Assembly: GCF_902459465.1 (NCBI RefSeq)
Contig: NC_047079.1
Span: forward strand, 186,001 to 250,000
Origin: Asterias rubens
Lineage: Eukaryota
Direction: 5' to 3'
DNA length: 64,000 nt
The notes beneath the pieces are model-generated. The model saw nothing but the letters and a program-made list of their open reading frames with translations. It searched no databases and was not told the origin of the DNA. Shown one piece after another: positions 28,686 to 45,600 of the stretch (the first letter of the stretch is position 1; every line of letters starts with the position of its first letter). The translations under genes were made by a program, and so were the position numbers.

Positions 28686-30514
28686 TTAATACTTGTACCA
28701 TTTTAATTCACTTGGTACATTTCTGCCCAAAAGATGCATTGAAAACAAAGTTTGTTCGTTTCATAATACTAATTTCTTACCATTATGACAAAGAGGAACA
28801 CCACTAACTAAATCTGTAGGTCAAGTCAACAATGTTGCGGGAACAAATAATCTTTCAAAAAGTAATCTCAAAACAAGTAATCTCAACGTATTGTTTTCAC
28901 TTTTTTATTTATTCTAAAACATGGTATAAGAACATGAGGAACAAGTAAGTATACAAGTTGTTTATCAAATAATACAAAAACATAAACTTTTAATTAAAGA
29001 CAACTATTGGGAGATAAAAAAGCTAACATTACACAATGCAGAATCATCATGCCACTCTGTCGGTAATTCAAAACCATGAACATTTGTTGTTTGAAAGTTT
29101 ATCTTTAATGGAAAGTACATCAACATTTATTATAGAAGTATCCATGTTATCGTATCTTTAACATGGGGCTGTTTTTGTGGTCGAATCATTCATTTTTTTC
29201 CTCAGTATTTTCAAGTCTACACTTAAGAGTAAGACGTAAGAGTGTGAAAACATATGACGTTGCTCCAATGTCGTGCTTACATAAGCACAGTTAATGGCGG
29301 ACTGTCTCTCGCAACGTAAAACCAAAACTTTAACAATTTCAACACACCATGAAGTGTAAGTGTTATTGTTAACAAAAACTGATAGATGATTTAGAAAAAA
29401 AAATTATTAAGTTTTTGATTGTGAACAATTTTCCTGTTATCCTACTGAAAACACATGACACCAGGATACTATTGTGACCATTACCAATCAGACTATGTTG
29501 TGTCTTTATTTGGCAGAATCTCATGCCACAAAGTGCCACTACACTTTACCATTTAAATCATGACTAAGTAGTTTCTACTACCTTGACTTTCGTTGTCATA
29601 ATTTATACTGAATTCAACAAATAATTAACAAACATACTTTCTGTACTGAAGAATATATCAGGCAGAACATTGAATGTTGCCTTGCATGGATCGGTCGAGT
29701 TGGTCTTTGAAAAGCGTTTGTAAATGTAACCATTAAATTTGTTATAAAATGCATATGATGTATTGAAAGATACACAAGTATCACTCGAAATGCGTGGTTT
29801 TCCTTTTACCTCGTCGACTAACACGGTCGGCCATTTATGGATAATAAACGGCCGACCGTGTTAGTTCACAAAGTAAAATGAAAACCATGTAATTTCAAGG
29901 CAAATTTGCGTGGATCATTGTATTCTACTTTTTAATCATCTTTCTAACCATATGCATTTTATAACAAACGATACAAATGCTTTTCAAAGACCAACTCGAC
30001 CGAGTTAACATTGAGTAGTAAAGACAAAACCCAGTGCTTTATGTTATCAAGCAAACTTTTACGAAGCATTAACACAAAGTGTTGAAGCAAAATGTGATGT
30101 CACTTTAGGTCTTTAAATAGTCACAACTACATCTTTATATTTCTGATTCATAAATACCTCAGACAGTTTCGCTATTCCTATTGGTTGAGAGCACGTCACG
30201 TGGGTGTGTGTATAAATCTTTGTTTATGACCAGTAAAAAGTGTTGAAACATGGGCGTGACACGCGAGCTTGCACCTGTGATTATAAGACAGTTTCTTCAG
30301 CATTCCCTTATAAGGAGTTGTTTACCCGAGGGCCTTGACTGGGCCTTACCATTTCATAGCTGTTCACTCATTGAACAGTCATAATTTTTGCATTTATCTT
30401 ACTTTTTGTCCCAAAGTGTTGATGTTTTTTTATCGAAAAGGTATTTATGAATGGGAATCAAAGTGTATTGAATCGGTTTTTAACTAGTGGTTTAAACCCT
30501 TCGAGGCCTGGTTC

Positions 30515-36785: not shown

Positions 36786-38167
36786 ATAGACTTCCCGTGG
36801 CCACATGCTATGCACAAATTAAAGTTTGCGACGCTCTGCATTCCCCCACAATTGTCAGCCATTTTCATGGTATGGAACAGAATAATAAGTAGGATTCAGT
36901 GAAACAAGTTAATAGTCCCCTAAAAAAAAACGAAAAGGAAACTATCTCAATTCATGGACATAAACTTACTCTTTATTTCAGTTGGTTTTGTTAGTGTCAG
37001 ACAATTACACATATTGCTATCATTGAAAGAAGTGAGTGTTTGCAAATCATTGTAATCGCCCTTATAGAGTTAGGGGCATCTCTGCAATAAAACTAGACTA
37101 TGTATCTATACCATGATATAATATGACTGCAGTAAAAAATAAAAAATAAATCAATATACACATTATATCGGGTCCCATGAATGGTCTACACTTCTAATAA
37201 AAAACATAGACAAACTTACATGTACACTCATGATATTAATAGTATTTTTAAAAAGCAACTAAAATGGCAGCTAGCTCACTGAGAACTTATAGCAAAAAAT
37301 GCGCTTTACTTAAAGTAGCAAAATTCAATAGTTTCACTCAAATTATTAAGTAACCATAATGAGAACTTTGAACATATTTATGCATGCTTGCCTGCATGAC
37401 CTTTTAAACTTACCTGGGCTAAAACTATAACTAAACCAGAAGCTATCCTCAGGACAGAGGAAATTCCTGAAACTGCCGTGGGTGTGTATAAACCAGTAAA
37501 AAGTGTTGAAACATGGGCGTGACACGCGAGTTTGCACCTGTGCTTATAAGACAGTTTCTTCATTCCTATTGATCGATCAGAGCAACGGCCGAGACAGTTG
37601 TGCCACATCACGAGATACGCGCGACGCGCACAGTATTCCCTTATAAGGAGTTGTTTACCAGAGTGCCTCGACAGGGCCTTACCATTTCATAGCTGGAGGG
37701 GAGTTGTGTTGAAAGAAATCATTGAAAAATTATAATTTTTTGCATTTGTTTTACTTTTTGACCATAAGTGCTGATGTTTTTTGACCGAAAAGGTATTTAT
37801 GAACGGGAATCAAAGTGTGTTGAGGCCTGGTTCTTGTTAATTTACCTCGACTTCGTCTCGGTAAAATTATCAAGAACCAGGCCTCGTGGGGATTAAACCA
37901 CTAGTTGAAAACCTCTTCACCACACATTGACTCCCTTATTTAAAAACACAACAATCTGCTAAGAAAACATTGTTTTCAAATGTTTAGCTCCCCAAACTGA
38001 GAATTGTTTGGAAAATATTTGGACCTCCTCCAAAGAAGAACTTGGTTCCTCGGTTGGCATTTACTTTATTGACAGCATTTCAATAAATGCCGATTACACT
38101 TTCTTCAAGAAATTGTTTAGCATTTACAAAATGAGACCAGCTCCCATATCGCAATGTCAACCGTCTT

Positions 38168-41100
38168 TCAAGGACTCTTGCCATCCATATTCTTCATAAA
38201 TTCCTTAAAGTTCATCCATTCAAACTCAGTCATGACTTTATTCAGGGCATATATTTCAAGCCTCTGTCGTTGCTTTAATGCCACTGCCTGATCTCGCTGG
38301 AGTTGCTGTTCTGTCTTTCGTGCTTCATCCCTTTGTTGCTGAACTTTCTTTTTTACCTTCTCCTCCATACCCGAGAGCCGCTCACGGACAGTTCGCTGAC
38401 TCTGAAAATAAAATACCAGCCAGTAATTATAATATTTATATTAAAATTAAACATCAGAGTTATGTAGAGGATTGTAAAACAGATCAAAGCTTGTTTGATA
38501 ACCTTGTATAAAAGAAAAGAAAACCTTTCCCAGGTCATCAATAAAAAATTAAAAAATAACTGTGTAAAGAAGTGAAGAAGAATGCATTACATAATTAGTA
38601 ATGGTAATGAATGAATACAAAAACTTAAGTTTGGTTGTCAATCTAAAAGTAGTAAACTTTATAAACTGGGAATGATGTCCAAATACTTCCGGCGAGAATC
38701 TTTTTTTAAATTTCATCGATATCCAGTTTCTCGTTTCATTTTGTCAAGTAGAAGCTTTATGCTCAAATGAAACAACAAATTGGACACAATAAGGCAATTT
38801 TAATAAATACACTATGTCATCTGAGATTGCCTGGAACTGGTTGTCTGTAAGTTGCAACATGTGACATGTACTTTAAGATTTCTTGCAAATGTGACCAATG
38901 ACCTGTATATGTCACAAGTTGGTTGGATTGTGTTTTTATTATACTTGATTGATGACAACTTCTCAAGGTTTGCTAGTTCCGTTTGAAGTACCGAACATGA
39001 TTAAATATTCCAGTCTCACTTGAAACAAAACATTGTTGTTTAGTAAAGTAAATTTGTTTTGATAATATTACATGAATCTTCATTTAATCTCCATTCATAA
39101 ATACCTCAGACAGTTTCGCTATTCCTATTGGTGGAGAGCGCGTCACGTGGGTGTGTATAAACATTTGTTAATGACCAGTAAAAAGTGTTGAAACATGGGC
39201 GTGACACGCGAGCTTGCACCTGTGCTAATAAGACAGTTTCTTTTTTATTCCTATTGGTCGAGAGCAATGGCCGGGACAGTTGTATCACATCATGAGATAC
39301 TCGCGACGAGCACAGCATTCCCTTATAAGGAGTTGTTTACCCGAGGGCCTAACCATTTCTCAGCTGGAGGGGTGTTGTGTTGAAAGAAATCATTGAAAAA
39401 TTATAATTTTTGCATTTATTTTACCTTTTGATGTTTTTTGACCAAAAAGGTATGAATGGGAATCAAAGTGTGTTGAATCGGTTTTTAACTAGTGGTTTAA
39501 ACCTGCCGAGGCCTGGTTCTTGATAATTTACTTCAACTTTGTCTTAGTAAAATTATCAAGAATCAGGCCTTGTTGGGTTTAAACCACTAGTTGAAAACCT
39601 CTTTACCACACATTGATTCCCTTATTATAAAAAGTTTCTCAATGTAAAAAAGAAAAACCAGTACCTACCCTTAGGTCTGTCATTGATGGAATGTACTGAT
39701 AATTCTGTAACATCTGAGGGGTTGGAGTACCAGGGGGAGCACAAGGTAGAATACATCCAAGCTCCCGAAGGTTACCAGACTGCTTCTCAGACAGGAATAC
39801 CTTAGTAACCTTTGACACGTCGTCCCTTCCTCTATGATGACCTGCATGAAGTCCTCCACCTACTCCTGGTATTCTAGGAGATACTCTACTGCCATACATA
39901 ACTGGATCATGTTCAACAGTTTCTAGAAGTTTTGACCCAATTGTCTCAGATGATATTTTATTGAATGAGTTTATTATTTTCATGTTGTAGTCCTTTTCTT
40001 CTTTGTTGGGTTTGACAGTCTTTTTGTTCTCTGAATCACATTTGTTATATCTGGAGCTGTAAATCTCAACCTTCTTAGGTTCAACAACTACAGGCACAGT
40101 GAGTAGCAATGAACCAATTGAGTTGTCTTGTAGAGGACCTCCTCTATTCTGGGGAGCCTGAGACCCACTTGGATGCTTTGCATCATGAGAATGTCTGTGA
40201 GTTGACTGACTCCTGGATTTGGCTCTGGATTGTCTTTTCTTTTTCTTTGTTGTTTTTTTCTTACGAAGTTTTGAAGAAACAGGATGATCTGTTGATGAGT
40301 AAATTGGAAAGATCCTGGTTTTAAATCATAGACACTGGATGAATGTTACAAAGGAAGAGCAATTCAAAGTATCGTTGACCCTGTGAGGGCATGTTTTAAC
40401 TGTGATGCAAAATGTTTTAAACTAGACAAATATATATGCTTTAGCAATGCAAAGTTATGAGTTTGAATTCCAGCCGAATGATAATTCACAGAACTTGGGA
40501 AAGTACAGTGCTTACCTGGTAGTACACATCAGTGCAAGGGTAATAACAAATTATAAATTTTATACTTTATTGTATGGTAATTTTTCAGGGTGAGTGATAT
40601 TGGTATAAAAGGGATTCTGAAAGTAACGAACGAGGCGAGCCACATCACATCTGAATGGGCAAGAGAAAAACTTACCAATGTGAGATTGTGAGATATAAAA
40701 AATGTTGAGCAAAAAGATTAAATAAATGTTTTCACACATTTCTAGTATGAAATTAATGTATGAGGAACATAGTATTTCAGTTATTTTGATACAATTAATA
40801 CAAATAATAATTATTGTAAACATTTCAAAACAGAGATTTGGTTTACCTGCAACATAAACTTGTATCATTTCATCGGAACGAGCACGATTTTGTTCTTCTC
40901 TGTCTCCAACTGAATTCCCTGGCAATATGGAATTAAAACCAGCTGGAACCTGGGTATCCACCAAGCTTTTATTACATGTTATATGATGATCACAGAGTCT
41001 TGGTTGGTCATTCTCCACCGAGTGCAATGGAGCAACAAGTTCTCTACTGTTAGTCATTGTACTGCTGGATGATTTACCACTTAAAGTTGCTGGACTTTTT

Positions 41101-41534
41101 GTCTTACTGCTTTGAGTCAGACCAAATGCCCTGGTCTTTGCACTTCGTGATAATTTATGAAGAGCTCGAAAGTTTGGAAACATGCTGTTCCTCAATGCTT
41201 GATGCTGAAAGCTCCCAACAAATGTCTCATCGCTTTGTTTTTCTGCAACTTTCTGTGTTTGCAGGAGTAAAGGAGTGTCAGATGACACAAAGGACCGCTG
41301 GCTTGGACTGATTGGTATTTCAGGTAAAGAACATGTGCGGCTGTGGCTGGGTGATGTCTTCCTGCCTTCATTCTGAACTTTCTTGTATATCACAGATGCA
41401 GACGTACTGGTATTGTGTCTTGGGATTGAAGCGGATATAAGCCTTGTTGTAGTAGCTTGACGACTGCTTGATGCACTGCCATAACATGCCACAGATTCAA
41501 TCATCATAGGACGGCTACACAATGTCAGGGACAT
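38168..41534 (-). CDS. Long Ser/Lys-rich, probably disordered protein (~513 aa) with C-terminal small vasohibin-binding protein (SVBP/CCDC23)-like domain
   Basis: Exons 41534-40847, 40288-39669, 38401-38168 (688+620+234 = 1542 nt, phases 1 and 0). The last exon encodes LKQRQRLEIYALNKVMTEFEWMNFKEFMKNM, versus human SVBP [31 protein letters not shown] (recalled). The exon 2 acceptor (caacag|AT at 40288) was chosen to keep frame. Confidence 0.75.
39093..39623 (+). mobile_element. Interspersed element with asymmetric inverted repeat and long 3' palindrome (Helentron/DINE-like); other copies 30146-30515 and ~37470-37938
   Basis: The 5' ATTCATAAATACC is mirrored by a subterminal GGTATTTATGAA in the 30146 and 37470 copies (degenerate here), followed by a ~150-bp imperfect palindrome at ~39458-39621. 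Confidence 0.65.
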
Positions 41535-41555
41535 TGTTAAAGATAATCAAGGAAC

Positions 41556-42690
41556 CTGTCAATTTTAAAGCAAAGACAGAATTACGATAATGAAATTGAA
41601 ACAAACTACAAATTACAATGTTATGATCACGTGCTACTTCTGCAATTGTTTTGGCCACTGCACTTTGCTGCGGAAAAACTGGATTCTGACCTCACTAGTC
41701 ATTACTAATTACTTCCTTATAAATAATTTGTTTCAAATAAAATATCTCAACTGATTTTTATAAATGGTGAAATGTGTAACTTTAGTGTAGATTACGGAAA
41801 AGTTTCCGTATGGCGCCACCACCTTTTCACTAATTTTTACAAAAAAGGATATCTCATTGAGGTAAATTAGATACTATATTATTTCATATCGAATGAAAAA
41901 GTGGTAACGCCATACGGAAACTTTTCCAAATAAATACATACCGCTTTATTATCCGAGTTCTACTCTACTAGACAAGTGATTATCGTATACAGTTTCATGG
42001 TTCCATTTGTCATGTTTATCAGTTGTAATCCACACGGTGGTGTAAATGATATCGTTTCATGGACACGCAACACTAGACACACACACGTAACTCAATCATC
42101 CCACCCAATCGAAATCTTCACCACACAACAAAAACTAAACTGCAGAAGCGGTATTATTGTTGTTTAGGAAATTTGCATACAGAGGTGTGTGTGTACCATA
42201 ACTCTATGTGTGTACAAAGCACAGCCTGGCTGCCCCACACCACCACAGACTGCACATACAGAGAGGCCGGCGCTCGACCTGTGATCGTAAACAATCGCGT
42301 TACTGTTGCTTAGACACTGACGTCAAAACTACAAAACTTGTCTTATAAAAAACACTATATTGGAAAGAAAATATACTATTAAAATAATTTTAATAAATGT
42401 TGATCACTTCAAATTATTTTAATACAATTATAAGCGTTCTTTAGTTTGAAATACACGTTAATTTTATATATTGAGTTGTACAGTAGCTTAAAAGGATCAT
42501 TTGTTTTGCGCCTGCGCATACATCGACACAGCACATGTGTGAAAATGCCATGCGTGTGTGTAGATACGTAGAACTTACGCTCAATTCAGCAATTGGCAAT
42601 TGTTACATGCGTGTAGTGTGTAGTATTTACACGAATGTACGACGAAGGAATCGCTGAACAGAAATAACTTACAGAAATAACTTAAACAAG
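41556..42690. promoter_or_regulatory. Probable bidirectional promoter region of the SVBP-domain gene (-) and NIP7 (+)
   Basis: Divergent start codons 1157 bp apart (41534 and 42691). Confidence 0.55.
41796..41927. mobile_element. MITE family E copy
   Basis: Same TIR and length as 12546-12677. Confidence 0.88.
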
Positions 42691-45600
42691 ATGAGGCCGC
42701 TCACTGAAGAGGAGACCAAATTAGTTTTTGAAAAATTGTCAAAATAGTGAGTAGTTTTTAATCTTGAATTGAATACATAAACATTAATTAGGCAAATTAG
42801 GCCTAATAATTATAGTACAATAAAAATAAAAACAGTCAGAGTGTGTTTACTTGTTTGCATGCAGTCAACAATGGCAGCAAGCAGTTAGTGTCGTGAGTAG
42901 ATTAGGAATAGACAACTCAACCAGTGTCATTGTCAACGGTTTAGACAGCTCGACCGTTCGTAGCCCCACTTCACTTGTGTGGCCAAGGCTAGCCTACCAC
43001 ACAACACAACACAAGTGGGGCTAGACCATTCGGACAACCGGTTACTTCGGCACCTTGCTAACTCGGCACCGGTATTCGGTAAACTCGGCACCTGCAAACT
43101 CGGCACTTACCTTGTCAACTCGGCACCTACAACTCGGTGGGGGGGGGGGTTAGGGTTAGGATTAGGATTTACAGGAAATTCTTGTAAACTTGCAGTAACG
43201 GAGGTCCGTTCGGTTCAACCTTCGGCTTGTCTTGGCCATCCGTCAAGTTGTCCTTGTTGTCTGAACCGTCGAGTTGTCTGAACATGCTGAACCATCGAGT
43301 TGTCCGTCGAACGAGTTATCTGACATCAAACTATTAAGGCTCCCCTGTGAGCCTTATATTAAACGGCGGGGCCTAAAATGTTGCGCTCCTTAATGTTATA
43401 CGATTTCGACAAAATCCTTGTTGTTAAACAAAAAATTATTGGTGAACATTTTATGGTCGTTTGCCATCAATAACCTCATCAATAACTTTACCCACACACC
43501 TATTATACATATGTACATTCATTATAAGCAAGATCACCATTGGAAGCTGTTGTTTTAGGGCCAGTCATAAAGAAGTAAGTTTGTAGAGCGAAGATTGCGA
43601 GTTCGCACTAATAGTGAGAGAATTTCTTTGAGATAGGGAGGAGCCCTGCCATTCTGAGTTTTCCAGGCGAGAACAAAATATTTTGGATTTTATTCTTTGC
43701 CAGACTGGGAGCCAGTGAAGTTGTTTCAATACAGTTGTGATGTGATCGTACAAATGTGTTTTAGATAATACGCGAGCAGCAGCGTTCTGGACATTAGCAC
43801 TTTTGTGATAAGATTCTTGTTTAAATACCATAAAGCAATTCGTTTCCATTATCAAGCTTGGATGTAATGAAAGCATGTATAATGGTAGAGGCAGACTTTT
43901 CTTTGAGGATATTACGAATGCTGCTAATATTTCTATTATTGTAAAAAGCAGATTAACAAATTTTCGTCACATGGGATTCCATGCACATAGTTTTATCCAT
44001 CATGATCCCCAGATTGGGGTCCTACTACTTGCCGTCAACTCGCCGTCAACTCACTAGCGCCGTCAACTCGCCGTCAACTCCTCCAATATACATTTAAAAT
44101 CCACAAAAGAAGCATAGAACTGTAAAGTATCAGCTCAAAGAGAATTCGCGAAAGTTTTAGGTCATATTTCGGAATAAAAATTGAGTTTTTTTGTCGTGAA
44201 AAAATTATCTCGAAACAGCAAAACCGTCGGCCGCCATCTTGCTTTTTCACATTGATTAGTCTTGGCCCAAGATGTCAATGATTGGTACTTTTTTTTTATC
44301 AACACAAAGTCGTTTTTGTGAATGAATTTTTACCGAAAACCATGAGAAATATGTAGTTTAGCCCAGATTTAACACTTCCGTGTCCCATTTATACATTTTT
44401 CATGTAAATTTAATGAGTTGACGGCACGAAAATGAGTTGACGGCAAGTCGGCGAGTTGACGGCAAGTAGTAGGACCGCCAGATTGTGGGCATTTGCAGAT
44501 GATGTTACAGTAGCAGTGCCAATTTGCATCCTGGTCATGCTGGTGATTGATTATTTTGTCTTGGTACAGGTACTTTTACATGTCAAAAATCTTCACTATA
44601 TATCGTCATATTGGCGATATTTACCCGACAATATATTGCCAGTCAAAGTTTTCAATATCGTCCAGGGTTACCTATTAATTATAGGAACAGTTATGTAAAT
44701 AATTGAATTATTCAACTTTCTTGGTTGGATAGACAGATGTAACAATTTATGCATAGTTAAATTTTAAACTTGTTTTAATGTTCTTGTTTTTTGCAGTATT
44801 GGAGAGAATGTAAGGATGTTGATTGATAGACCAGATGGAACATATTGCTTTAGGTTTCACAGAGAAAGAGTCTACTATGTCAGGTATGGTAGTAAAGTAA
44901 CTGAAAGACTCTGTCAACTCCAATTAACTACATTTGTACATGTTTTTCTGCTTCTTTGGTTCCCTTGACCCTCCAAGATCTTCCATGCAGCTGCATGCTC
45001 AAACAACAGGTTCTGTCCTCAGGACGAGCGTTTGTATACAATGTCTTAAAGCACCTACTATTGAATGGATTTGTATATGGTTAGGCAAACAAACGTGTAT
45101 ATTTTGGCCAGCAGTATGATATCTTGTGATGAATGCAGGACACAGTGAGCCCTCCTATTGGTTGATTATTATGTTAATGGTTTGTACAATTTTTGTGTTA
45201 TATGATTGCAAACTTGCAGTACAAGTCAGTGTGGTTCATGCATCTTACTATAATTTGTATTCACCTGTTAAAACTCAGGCAGTTTATCAATTCAACTGAT
45301 TTGTCAACATTAAAGAGGGGGATACTTATACTTTGAATCAAGCAGAATGACTAGAAGAAAAAGTGAATTTGATATGTGTCTGTTTCTTGTGATCTGACTA
45401 GCCAAGACATCATGAAGCGTGCAGCCAGTGTGAGTAGAAAGCAGTTGGTCAGTATGGGGACATGTTTTGGAAAGGTCTCAAAGTCAATGAAGTTTCATCT
45501 GAACATTACTGCCCTGGACTTCCTGGCTCCATATGCAAAGGTACATAAATCAAGAAAACATTTTCCTTTTAGACAAAAACAGTGGCTTTCTTAATCCAGT

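What the first reader, a model, noticed from the sequence alone, without database searches (positions are those of the whole stretch)
38168..41534. SVBP tubulin-detyrosination cofactor motif at the end of a ~513-aa disordered protein, with a self-contained 66-aa ORF in the last exon
Seen in sequence: the last exon closely matches the vasohibin-binding helix (KQRQRxEIYALNxVMTE) but is spliced in frame to ~436 aa of Ser-rich and Lys/Arg-rich sequence (LRKKKTTKKKKRQSRAKSRS). An internal ATG at 38368 gives exactly 66 aa. Established: vertebrate SVBP is a 66-aa chaperone and cofactor of the VASH1/2 tubulin carboxypeptidases. Inference: a 'long SVBP' whose basic disordered arm could target detyrosinase activity to microtubules, cilia/sperm axonemes or the nucleus, or a locus producing long and short forms.
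Basis: partly seen in the sequence, partly recalled or inferred. Interest (0 to 1): 0.72.

Follow-up and report, generated by a model that had tools for sequence, protein, structure and literature searches.

The report
Starfish SVBP is a long protein
The starfish's only copy of SVBP, the tiny helper of the enzyme that trims tyrosine off tubulin, is the tail of a 513-residue protein, and the same long form occurs in many invertebrates, so the 66-residue vertebrate SVBP looks like a cut-down remnant.

Summary
On the minus strand at 41534..38168 sit three coding exons with GT-AG introns that give 513 aa. The last exon matches Pfam CCDC23/SVBP (E 4e-17) and holds a 66-aa ORF starting at 38368.

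Spliced contigs from four runs, four studies and two species carry all three coding exons joined exactly as predicted, plus a 5'UTR exon in three of the runs.

The genome is Asterias rubens. NCBI already lists this 513-aa model as an "uncharacterized protein". It is the only SVBP locus in the genome, and one intact vasohibin gene lies on another contig.

The long form is not a local oddity. SVBP-domain proteins of about 400-560 aa occur in other echinoderms, hemichordates, amphioxus and molluscs, and shorter models (153-211 aa) with the same extension occur in an annelid and a sea anemone. All named 66-68-aa forms are vertebrate.

A roughly 50-residue module just before the helix straddles the exon 2/3 junction, is strongly conserved and has no vertebrate counterpart. 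The N-terminal arm is predicted to be disordered and carries a conserved basic cluster.

No evidence for a short isoform was found. No paper describing the long form was found. The arm's function remains inference.

The parts
41940..42194 (-). 5'UTR exon (non-coding first exon)
   Evidence: Joint 41553>41940 (CT..AC on the plus strand = GT..AG on the minus strand) in contigs of X1, X3 and X4. Contigs end at 42189-42194. The spliced 5'UTR is 274 nt, with short uORFs and in-frame stops before the main ATG.
40847..41553 (-). Exon with the start codon (ATG at 41534-41532); encodes residues 1-229 plus one base
   Evidence: 51% identical to an exon-1 ORF call from what is probably another sea star, which reads through the same 'YVAG' donor boundary. 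Indels against the other runs are 12 nt and 3 nt, both multiples of three.
41136..41183 (-). Arm motif around FPNFRAL (residues 118-133); the only predicted helix in the arm
   Evidence: Conserved in echinoderms and in weaker form in hemichordates and amphioxus. AF2 helix 122-131 at pLDDT about 62.
39669..40288 (-). Coding exon 2, residues 230-436
   Evidence: Joints 40288>40847 and 38401>39669 in all four runs; GT-AG boundaries.
40191..40265 (-). Basic cluster, residues 238-262 (13 K/R in 25)
   Evidence: 0 of 500 shuffles reach this density. Most forms of 400 aa or more (15 of 17 tested) have a comparable cluster of 11-15 K/R in 25, at a collinear mid-arm position in the deuterostomes aligned.
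39669..39812 (-). Conserved pre-helix module, first part (residues 389-436; LSEKQSG ... PCAPP.TP ... Y.P S..D)
   Evidence: Invariant or near-invariant columns S396, S400, G407, P411, A413, P414, P415, T417, P418, Y428, P430, S431 and D434 across 36-38 sequences from at least five phyla. AF2 predicts four short strands and a short helix at pLDDT 60-83.
38393..38401 (-). Conserved pre-helix module, last three residues (SQR), at the start of the last exon
   Evidence: Q438 is near-invariant and R439 invariant, so the module straddles the intron.
37877..38401 (-). Last exon: CDS 38401-38168 (stop at 38170-38168) plus at least 291 nt of 3'UTR
   Evidence: Contigs stop at 37877-37919 inside a repeat copy, so the true 3' end is not defined. 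An AATAAA lies at 38070.
38366..38368 (-). Internal ATG (Met448), start of the 66-aa ORF; aligns with Met1 of human SVBP
   Evidence: The position is Ile or Leu in Antedon, Lytechinus, Dreissena and others.
38183..38356 (-). Pfam CCDC23/SVBP match (residues 452-509); part of a long helix
   Evidence: AF2 helix 432-509 at pLDDT above 90.
38222..38266 (-). Vasohibin-contact core, Q482-F496
   Evidence: Of the ten human SVBP contact residues listed in PMC6937246 (Q35, R36, E38, I39, Y40, A41, L42, N43, V45, L49), nine are identical here and L49 is Phe. Mapping by the ungapped alignment.

Best explanation
This is the single Asterias rubens orthologue of SVBP, in a long form that is ancestral to animals rather than specific to this locus. 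One mRNA (a 5'UTR exon plus three coding exons) encodes 513 aa. Shown: the last ~125 residues form a conserved domain, made of a ~50-residue pre-helix module followed by the vasohibin-binding helix. Vertebrate SVBP corresponds only to the stretch from the internal Met onward. Inferred from homology: the helix inserts into the starfish vasohibin, stabilises it and activates it as a tubulin detyrosinase, as in vertebrates. Inferred with less support: the ~390-residue disordered arm, with its basic cluster and short conserved motifs, and the pre-helix module add something the vertebrate cofactor lacks. The most likely addition is electrostatic tethering to the acidic microtubule surface, or regulated localisation. 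The module may also be a second contact with vasohibin or tubulin.
For: Transcript structure: single contigs of 1.2-2.1 kb in X1 and X2 (organism A) and X3 and X4 (organism B), from four studies, carry the joints 38401>39669 and 40288>40847. X1, X3 and X4 also carry 41553>41940. Unique intron sequence has no or almost no depth. Indels are multiples of three in the coding exons (12 and 3 nt), but 8, 1, 2, 2 and 3 nt in the 5'UTR exon.
Identity: Pfam CCDC23 at 4e-17; PDB SVBP chains at 6e-10, and 1e-18 with the profile; 9 of 10 published vasohibin-contact residues identical.
Only one PF15674 locus exists in the 418-Mb genome, so there is no retrocopy and no separate short gene.
Partner: one vasohibin gene, six exon matches over the Pfam cut-off. 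It keeps the equivalents of W74, W78, C169, H204, S221, R222, R223 and L226.
Breadth: of 67 representatives, about half are 400-563 aa with the domain at the extreme C-terminus. Named examples are Patiria, Amphiura, Antedon, Diadema, Lytechinus, Saccoglossus, Ptychodera, Branchiostoma, Aplysia, Lymnaea, Dreissena, Sinanodonta, Mizuhopecten and Solemya, plus shorter models with the same module in Ridgeia and Actinia. All named 66-68-aa forms are vertebrate.
The pre-helix module is conserved across phyla and crosses the exon junction.
Arm: motifs are collinear across deuterostomes, basic clusters are common, and AF2 predicts disorder.
Context: vertebrate SVBP makes no contact with the microtubule (PMC7449697), and the disordered tails of VASH set microtubule behaviour in vertebrates (PMC9750192 abstract).
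Against: No binding or activity data exist for any long form, and no complex prediction could be run, so the cofactor role rests on homology. The runs are labelled 'RNA?' by guess; that they are RNA is inferred from exact intron removal. Contigs cannot show rare isoforms or transcript starts, so a minor short transcript is not excluded. The arm evolves fast. In a partial sample, 4 of 4 listed differences between organisms A and B in the arm change the amino acid, against 1 of 4 in the module. Parts of the arm may therefore be only loosely constrained. The pre-helix module's fold is predicted with only moderate confidence and has no structural relatives.
Confidence: 0.8

Rival explanations
1. 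The working cofactor is a stand-alone 66-aa SVBP made from an internal promoter in intron 2 or by internal initiation. On this view the long mRNA is a minor or non-functional read-in.
For: The ORF is exactly 66 aa and its Met aligns with human Met1. The ATG has a good context, with G at -3 and G at +4.
Against: All four runs carry the exon 2-exon 3 joint, and no contig starts in intron 2 and continues into the exon. The residues just upstream of the Met, and the end of exon 2, are among the best conserved of the whole protein across phyla. The Met is Ile or Leu in several orthologues. 32 ATGs precede it in the mRNA. The 66-aa gene calls in public data lie on genomic eDNA contigs.
Confidence: 0.08
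2. The 513-aa model is a fusion artefact: two neighbouring genes joined by read-through or by assembly.
For: The arm has no Pfam family and looks unrelated to the helix.
Against: The same joints appear in four studies and two species. The same architecture, with collinear arm motifs, is seen in nine deuterostome genera and in molluscs. The pre-helix module was found only together with PF15674.
Confidence: 0.02
3. The long protein is a precursor, and proteolysis releases a small SVBP-like C-terminal fragment that is the active cofactor.
For: A basic cluster and a disordered arm offer many potential protease sites. The vertebrate protein shows that the tail alone is sufficient for function.
Against: No evidence for cleavage was found. 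The conserved block begins about 60 residues before the vertebrate start, which argues that more than the tail is used.
Confidence: 0.07

Closest known systems
Vertebrate small vasohibin-binding protein (SVBP/CCDC23, 66 aa; PDB 6J4O, 6JZC, 6OCF and others)
   Same: The C-terminal 62-66 residues align without gaps. Q-R, the IYALN stretch, M, E and two F positions are invariant, and 9 of 10 vasohibin-contact residues are identical. A vasohibin partner is present in the genome.
   Different: The starfish protein is 513 aa rather than 66. It has a conserved ~50-residue pre-helix module and a ~390-residue disordered arm, neither with a vertebrate counterpart. The vertebrate start corresponds to an internal Met here.
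Automatically annotated invertebrate orthologues (for example Patiria miniata XP_038061613 / A0A914ACZ4, Saccoglossus XP_002731167, Branchiostoma CAH1240053, Mizuhopecten XP_021374610)
   Same: The same architecture: long variable arm, basic cluster, pre-helix module and C-terminal helix. Patiria is 52% identical overall and 79% in the C-terminal domain.
   Different: None in kind. These records are named 'uncharacterized protein', or 'Small vasohibin-binding protein' by rule. No paper describing the long form was found.
Disordered N- and C-terminal regions of vertebrate VASH1/VASH2
   Same: This is a functional analogy only. Those disordered flanks of the enzyme determine how the complex behaves on microtubules (PMC9750192 abstract). 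The basic arm here could play that part from the cofactor side.
   Different: They lie on a different polypeptide and have no sequence relation. The analogy is untested.
Trypanosomatid vasohibins that work without SVBP
   Same: They show that the enzyme-cofactor arrangement varies across eukaryotes (PMC11761321).
   Different: There the cofactor is absent. Here it is enlarged.

Membership tests
SVBP / CCDC23 (Pfam PF15674) | Sequence match to the family profile above the curated cut-off | tested here: met
   62.4 bits against a cut-off of 27, E 4e-17, profile positions 2-59 of 63. 61.5 bits in the six-frame genome search.
SVBP / CCDC23 (Pfam PF15674) | Conservation of the residues that contact vasohibin in solved complexes | tested here: met
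   Q35, R36, E38, I39, Y40, A41, L42, N43 and V45 are identical and L49 is Phe. The residue list comes from PMC6937246 and the mapping from the ungapped alignment.
SVBP / CCDC23 (Pfam PF15674) | A single long alpha-helix carrying those residues | tested here: met
   AF2 helix 432-509 at pLDDT above 90. This is a prediction only.
SVBP / CCDC23 (Pfam PF15674) | A vasohibin partner in the same genome with an intact SVBP pocket and catalytic residues | tested here: met
   Six exon matches to PF14822 on contig C29. The equivalents of W74, W78, C169, H204, S221, R222, R223 and L226 are kept; V81 is Ala.
SVBP / CCDC23 (Pfam PF15674) | Small stand-alone protein of about 66 aa (the 'small' in the name) | tested here: not met
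   The transcripts encode 513 aa. This feature describes the vertebrate members, not the Pfam family; about half of the representatives found are 400-563 aa.
SVBP / CCDC23 (Pfam PF15674) | Physical binding to vasohibin and stimulation of tubulin detyrosination | not testable with these tools
   No full-length starfish vasohibin protein could be obtained as an unaltered session sequence. The biochemistry is needed.

The most novel reading that the evidence does not exclude
SVBP was ancestrally a protein of several hundred residues. Its conserved pre-helix module is a second, undescribed functional element that contacts vasohibin or tubulin. Its basic disordered arm tethers or localises the detyrosinase. 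Vertebrates then reduced the cofactor to the stretch after an internal Met and moved the microtubule-tuning role onto the enzyme's own disordered tails.
Probability: 0.3. Interest if true: 0.72.

Novelty: new variant of a known kind. Interest (0 to 1): 0.55.

Why it matters
All mechanistic work on the vasohibin cofactor uses the 66-residue vertebrate protein. That protein is treated as a passive chaperone helix that does not touch the microtubule. If most animal lineages use a form six to eight times longer, with a strongly conserved extra module and a basic arm, the cofactor may take an active part in deciding where and when tubulin is detyrosinated. Its vertebrate form would then be a reduction. 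This gives directly testable constructs (tail only, module plus tail, full length) in systems with strong microtubule biology, such as starfish oocytes, sea urchin embryos and sperm axonemes. It also corrects a naming trap: database entries called 'small vasohibin-binding protein' that are 400-560 aa are not annotation errors.

Tried and rejected
- Short isoform: the 66-aa products in public collections lie on ENA metagenome DNA contigs colinear with the genome, including intron 2, so they are ORF calls and not transcripts.
- Second SVBP gene or retrocopy: none in the genome.
- Fusion artefact: rejected.
- Families for the arm: Pfam gave nothing at E up to 1 for exon 1 or exon 2. The protein atlas gave no usable hit for residues 1-388 or 385-445.
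- Fold of the pre-helix module: Foldseek against PDB found nothing. AlphaFold DB clusters returned only other long SVBPs. The PDB profile search matched only from the vertebrate start onward.
- A vertebrate protein carrying the module without the helix: a word-limited search found 13 proteins, all with PF15674 and all molluscan. This is weak negative evidence.
- Literature: seven full-text searches found no description of long invertebrate SVBPs. The library is incomplete, so prior notice cannot be excluded.
- Earlier notes of this scan: the place look-up returned nothing bearing on this gene beyond the finding itself, and the words vasohibin, SVBP and detyrosination occur in no finding.
- dN/dS between the two Asterias-like species: only 12 of about 50 differences were listed, so no formal estimate was made.

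Full report
**What is in the sequence**

The feature lies on the minus strand. One search lists a 66-aa ATG ORF at 38168..38368 and a 324-aa ORF beginning at 41534. A second in-frame chain, using an acceptor 6 nt further on, gives 511 aa.

The 77 residues of the last exon match Pfam PF15674 (CCDC23, the SVBP family) at E 4e-17 and 62.4 bits against a cut-off of 27. They also match solved human SVBP chains at about 6e-10 without gaps. Neither upstream exon matches any Pfam family.

**Are the exons joined?**

I laid the contigs of four runs on 37500-43400. The runs came from four studies: two of the window's species (organism A) and two of a close relative (organism B).

- In each run a single contig of 1.2-2.1 kb carries the joints 38401>39669 and 40288>40847.
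- Three runs also carry 41553>41940.
- All three skipped stretches end CT..AC on the plus strand, which is GT..AG on the gene's strand.
- The bins of intron sequence outside the repeat copies have zero or near-zero depth. The runs are only guessed to be RNA by their records, but this coverage shows they behave as cDNA.
- The genome holds a single PF15674 locus, so the joined form cannot come from a processed DNA copy.
- Indels against the window are 12 nt and 3 nt in the coding part of exon 1. In the 5'UTR exon they are 8, 1, 2, 2 and 3 nt. That is the pattern expected if the long frame is read.

The mRNA has a 274-nt 5'UTR with in-frame stops before the ATG at 41534. 32 ATGs lie upstream of the internal ATG.

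**Whose gene is it?**

One search shows that the 513-aa model is identical to NCBI's "uncharacterized protein LOC117302165" of Asterias rubens. The model itself is therefore already in the databases.

The same genome has one vasohibin gene on another contig, with six exon matches above the Pfam cut-off. Its exons keep the equivalents of VASH1 W74 and W78 (SVBP pocket), and of C169, H204, S221, R222, R223 and L226 (active site).

Ten SVBP residues are reported to contact VASH1 (PMC6937246). Nine are identical in the starfish protein, and L49 is Phe, using the ungapped alignment.

**The long form is general**

An exhaustive HMMER search with the last exon returned 67 cluster representatives. About half are 400-563 aa with the match at the very C-terminus, and most of those match from residue 1 or 2 of the exon, upstream of the internal Met.

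The named long members are:

- Echinoderms: Patiria, Amphiura, Antedon, Diadema and Lytechinus.
- Hemichordates: Saccoglossus and Ptychodera.
- Cephalochordate: Branchiostoma.
- Molluscs: Aplysia, Lymnaea, Littorina, Batillaria, Dreissena, Sinanodonta, Mizuhopecten, Solemya, oysters, Haliotis and Biomphalaria.
- Shorter models that still carry the extension: the annelid Ridgeia (153 aa) and the sea anemone Actinia (211 aa).

All named 66-68-aa proteins are vertebrate: sturgeons, paddlefish, gar, chicken and rodents. The longer vertebrate "isoform X1" models lack the invertebrate extension. Unnamed short hits that resemble invertebrate sequences sit on short contigs and look like bacterial-style ORF calls. 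That last point is my inference for those I did not trace.

**What is conserved**

Alignments of 36 full-length proteins and of 38 C-terminal regions show one conserved block, residues about 389-505 of the starfish protein. It has two parts.

- The second part is the known SVBP helix.
- The first part (389-439) is a module of roughly 50 residues. Its consensus runs K-V-Y-L-S-E-K-Q-S-G, eight variable residues, P-C-A-P-P-A-T-P-T-P, a short variable stretch, E-Y-V-P-S-x-x-D-I-R-S-Q-R.
- Within the module, S396, P411, P414, P415, P418 and R439 are invariant across the 38 C-terminal regions, and eight more positions are at least 90% conserved.
- The module ends three residues into the last exon, so the intron cuts through it. 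This is independent evidence that exon 2 and exon 3 belong to one reading frame.

A profile of the whole block matches human SVBP only from profile position 67 onward, with human Met1 on the starfish internal Met. In a word-limited search the module was found only in proteins that also carry PF15674.

**Predicted structure**

AlphaFold2 with these alignments gives the following:

- A long helix at residues 432-509, pLDDT above 90.
- Four short strands and a short helix for the module, pLDDT 60-83.
- Disorder for residues 1-388, apart from a short helix at 122-131.

Fold searches found only other long SVBPs.

**The arm**

The arm is 16% Ser. Most forms of 400 aa or more (15 of 17 tested) have a mid-arm cluster of 11-15 K/R in 25 residues, reached by at most 2 of 500 shuffles (9 of 500 in Branchiostoma).

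Across nine deuterostome genera the arm keeps short motifs in the same order:

1. A C-R-x-P motif near the N-terminus.
2. L-P-x-I.
3. F-P-N-F-R-A-L.
4. The basic cluster.
5. K-V-E-I-Y-S-S-R-Y-N-K (echinoderms only).
6. An I-Y-G motif.

Between the two Asterias-like species, the listed differences are a partial sample. In the arm 4 of 4 change the amino acid. In the module 1 of 4 does. The arm is therefore homologous and kept in frame, but only loosely constrained outside its motifs.

**Short isoform?**

I found no support for one.

- The 66-aa gene calls in public data lie on metagenome DNA contigs that are 97-99.9% identical to, and colinear with, the genome including intron 2.
- The internal Met is Ile or Leu in Antedon, Lytechinus, Dreissena and others, as expected for a hydrophobic helix position rather than a conserved start.
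- Contigs cannot exclude a rare transcript, so I leave this at under 10%.

**Mechanism**

- Shown: the gene structure, the single locus, the conserved helix and contact residues, the intact partner enzyme, and the cross-phylum long architecture.
- Inferred from homology: the helix binds and activates the starfish vasohibin.
- Inferred more weakly: the extra parts add function. In vertebrates SVBP has no contact with the microtubule (PMC7449697), and the enzyme's own disordered tails set its behaviour on the lattice (PMC9750192 abstract). A basic disordered arm on the cofactor could do the same job through the acidic tubulin tails, or could act as a nuclear or other localisation signal. The pre-helix module, being the most conserved novelty, is the better candidate for a specific second contact.
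- None of this could be tested here. A complex prediction was not possible because no unaltered full-length vasohibin sequence was available.

**Novelty and score**

The protein model and its Pfam hit are already public, and UniProt names several orthologues by rule. Seven full-text searches found no paper that describes long invertebrate SVBPs or the pre-helix module. The library is incomplete.

I rate it a new variant of a known kind and give it moderate interest. It is surprising for people who work on the tubulin code, and easy to test. It rests on sequence evidence only for anything beyond architecture.

Noticed in passing
window 37492-37946 and 39093-39632: Two same-orientation copies (86-89% identical) of an interspersed repeat of roughly 450-540 nt that ends in a 72-nt hairpin. 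One lies in intron 2 and one in or just after the 3'UTR; a fragment is at 30146-30253. The repeat is extremely abundant in the RNA-like contigs (summed depth in the thousands to tens of thousands), and the transcript contigs break at its edge.
   Followed up: partly
window 40847-41472 (coding exon 1): The contigs of both organism-A runs lack 12 nt relative to the window within exon 1. This is an in-frame four-codon length polymorphism in the disordered arm. The exact position was not shown.
   Followed up: no
window 41940-42194 plus 41535-41553: The 274-nt 5'UTR holds six upstream ATGs that open short uORFs of 3-17 codons. This might dampen translation of the main ORF.
   Followed up: no
G000:C29:90955-95924 (minus strand; loci L002-L007): The starfish vasohibin gene. 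The open frame of its first matched exon offers a Met only 27 residues before the conserved core, and that stretch is acidic. The enzyme may therefore lack the long N-terminal tail of vertebrate VASH1. No gene model was built.
   Followed up: partly
proteins P0083 and P0034 (public records): A 69-aa SVBP-like protein in JGI/IMG carries the name 'prephenate dehydratase'. The Gigantopelta long SVBP is named 'PRRC2C-like'. Both look like mis-namings.
   Followed up: no
window 38070: An AATAAA lies 98 nt after the stop codon, yet all four transcript contigs run at least 150 nt past it. A shorter 3'UTR variant may exist.
   Followed up: no
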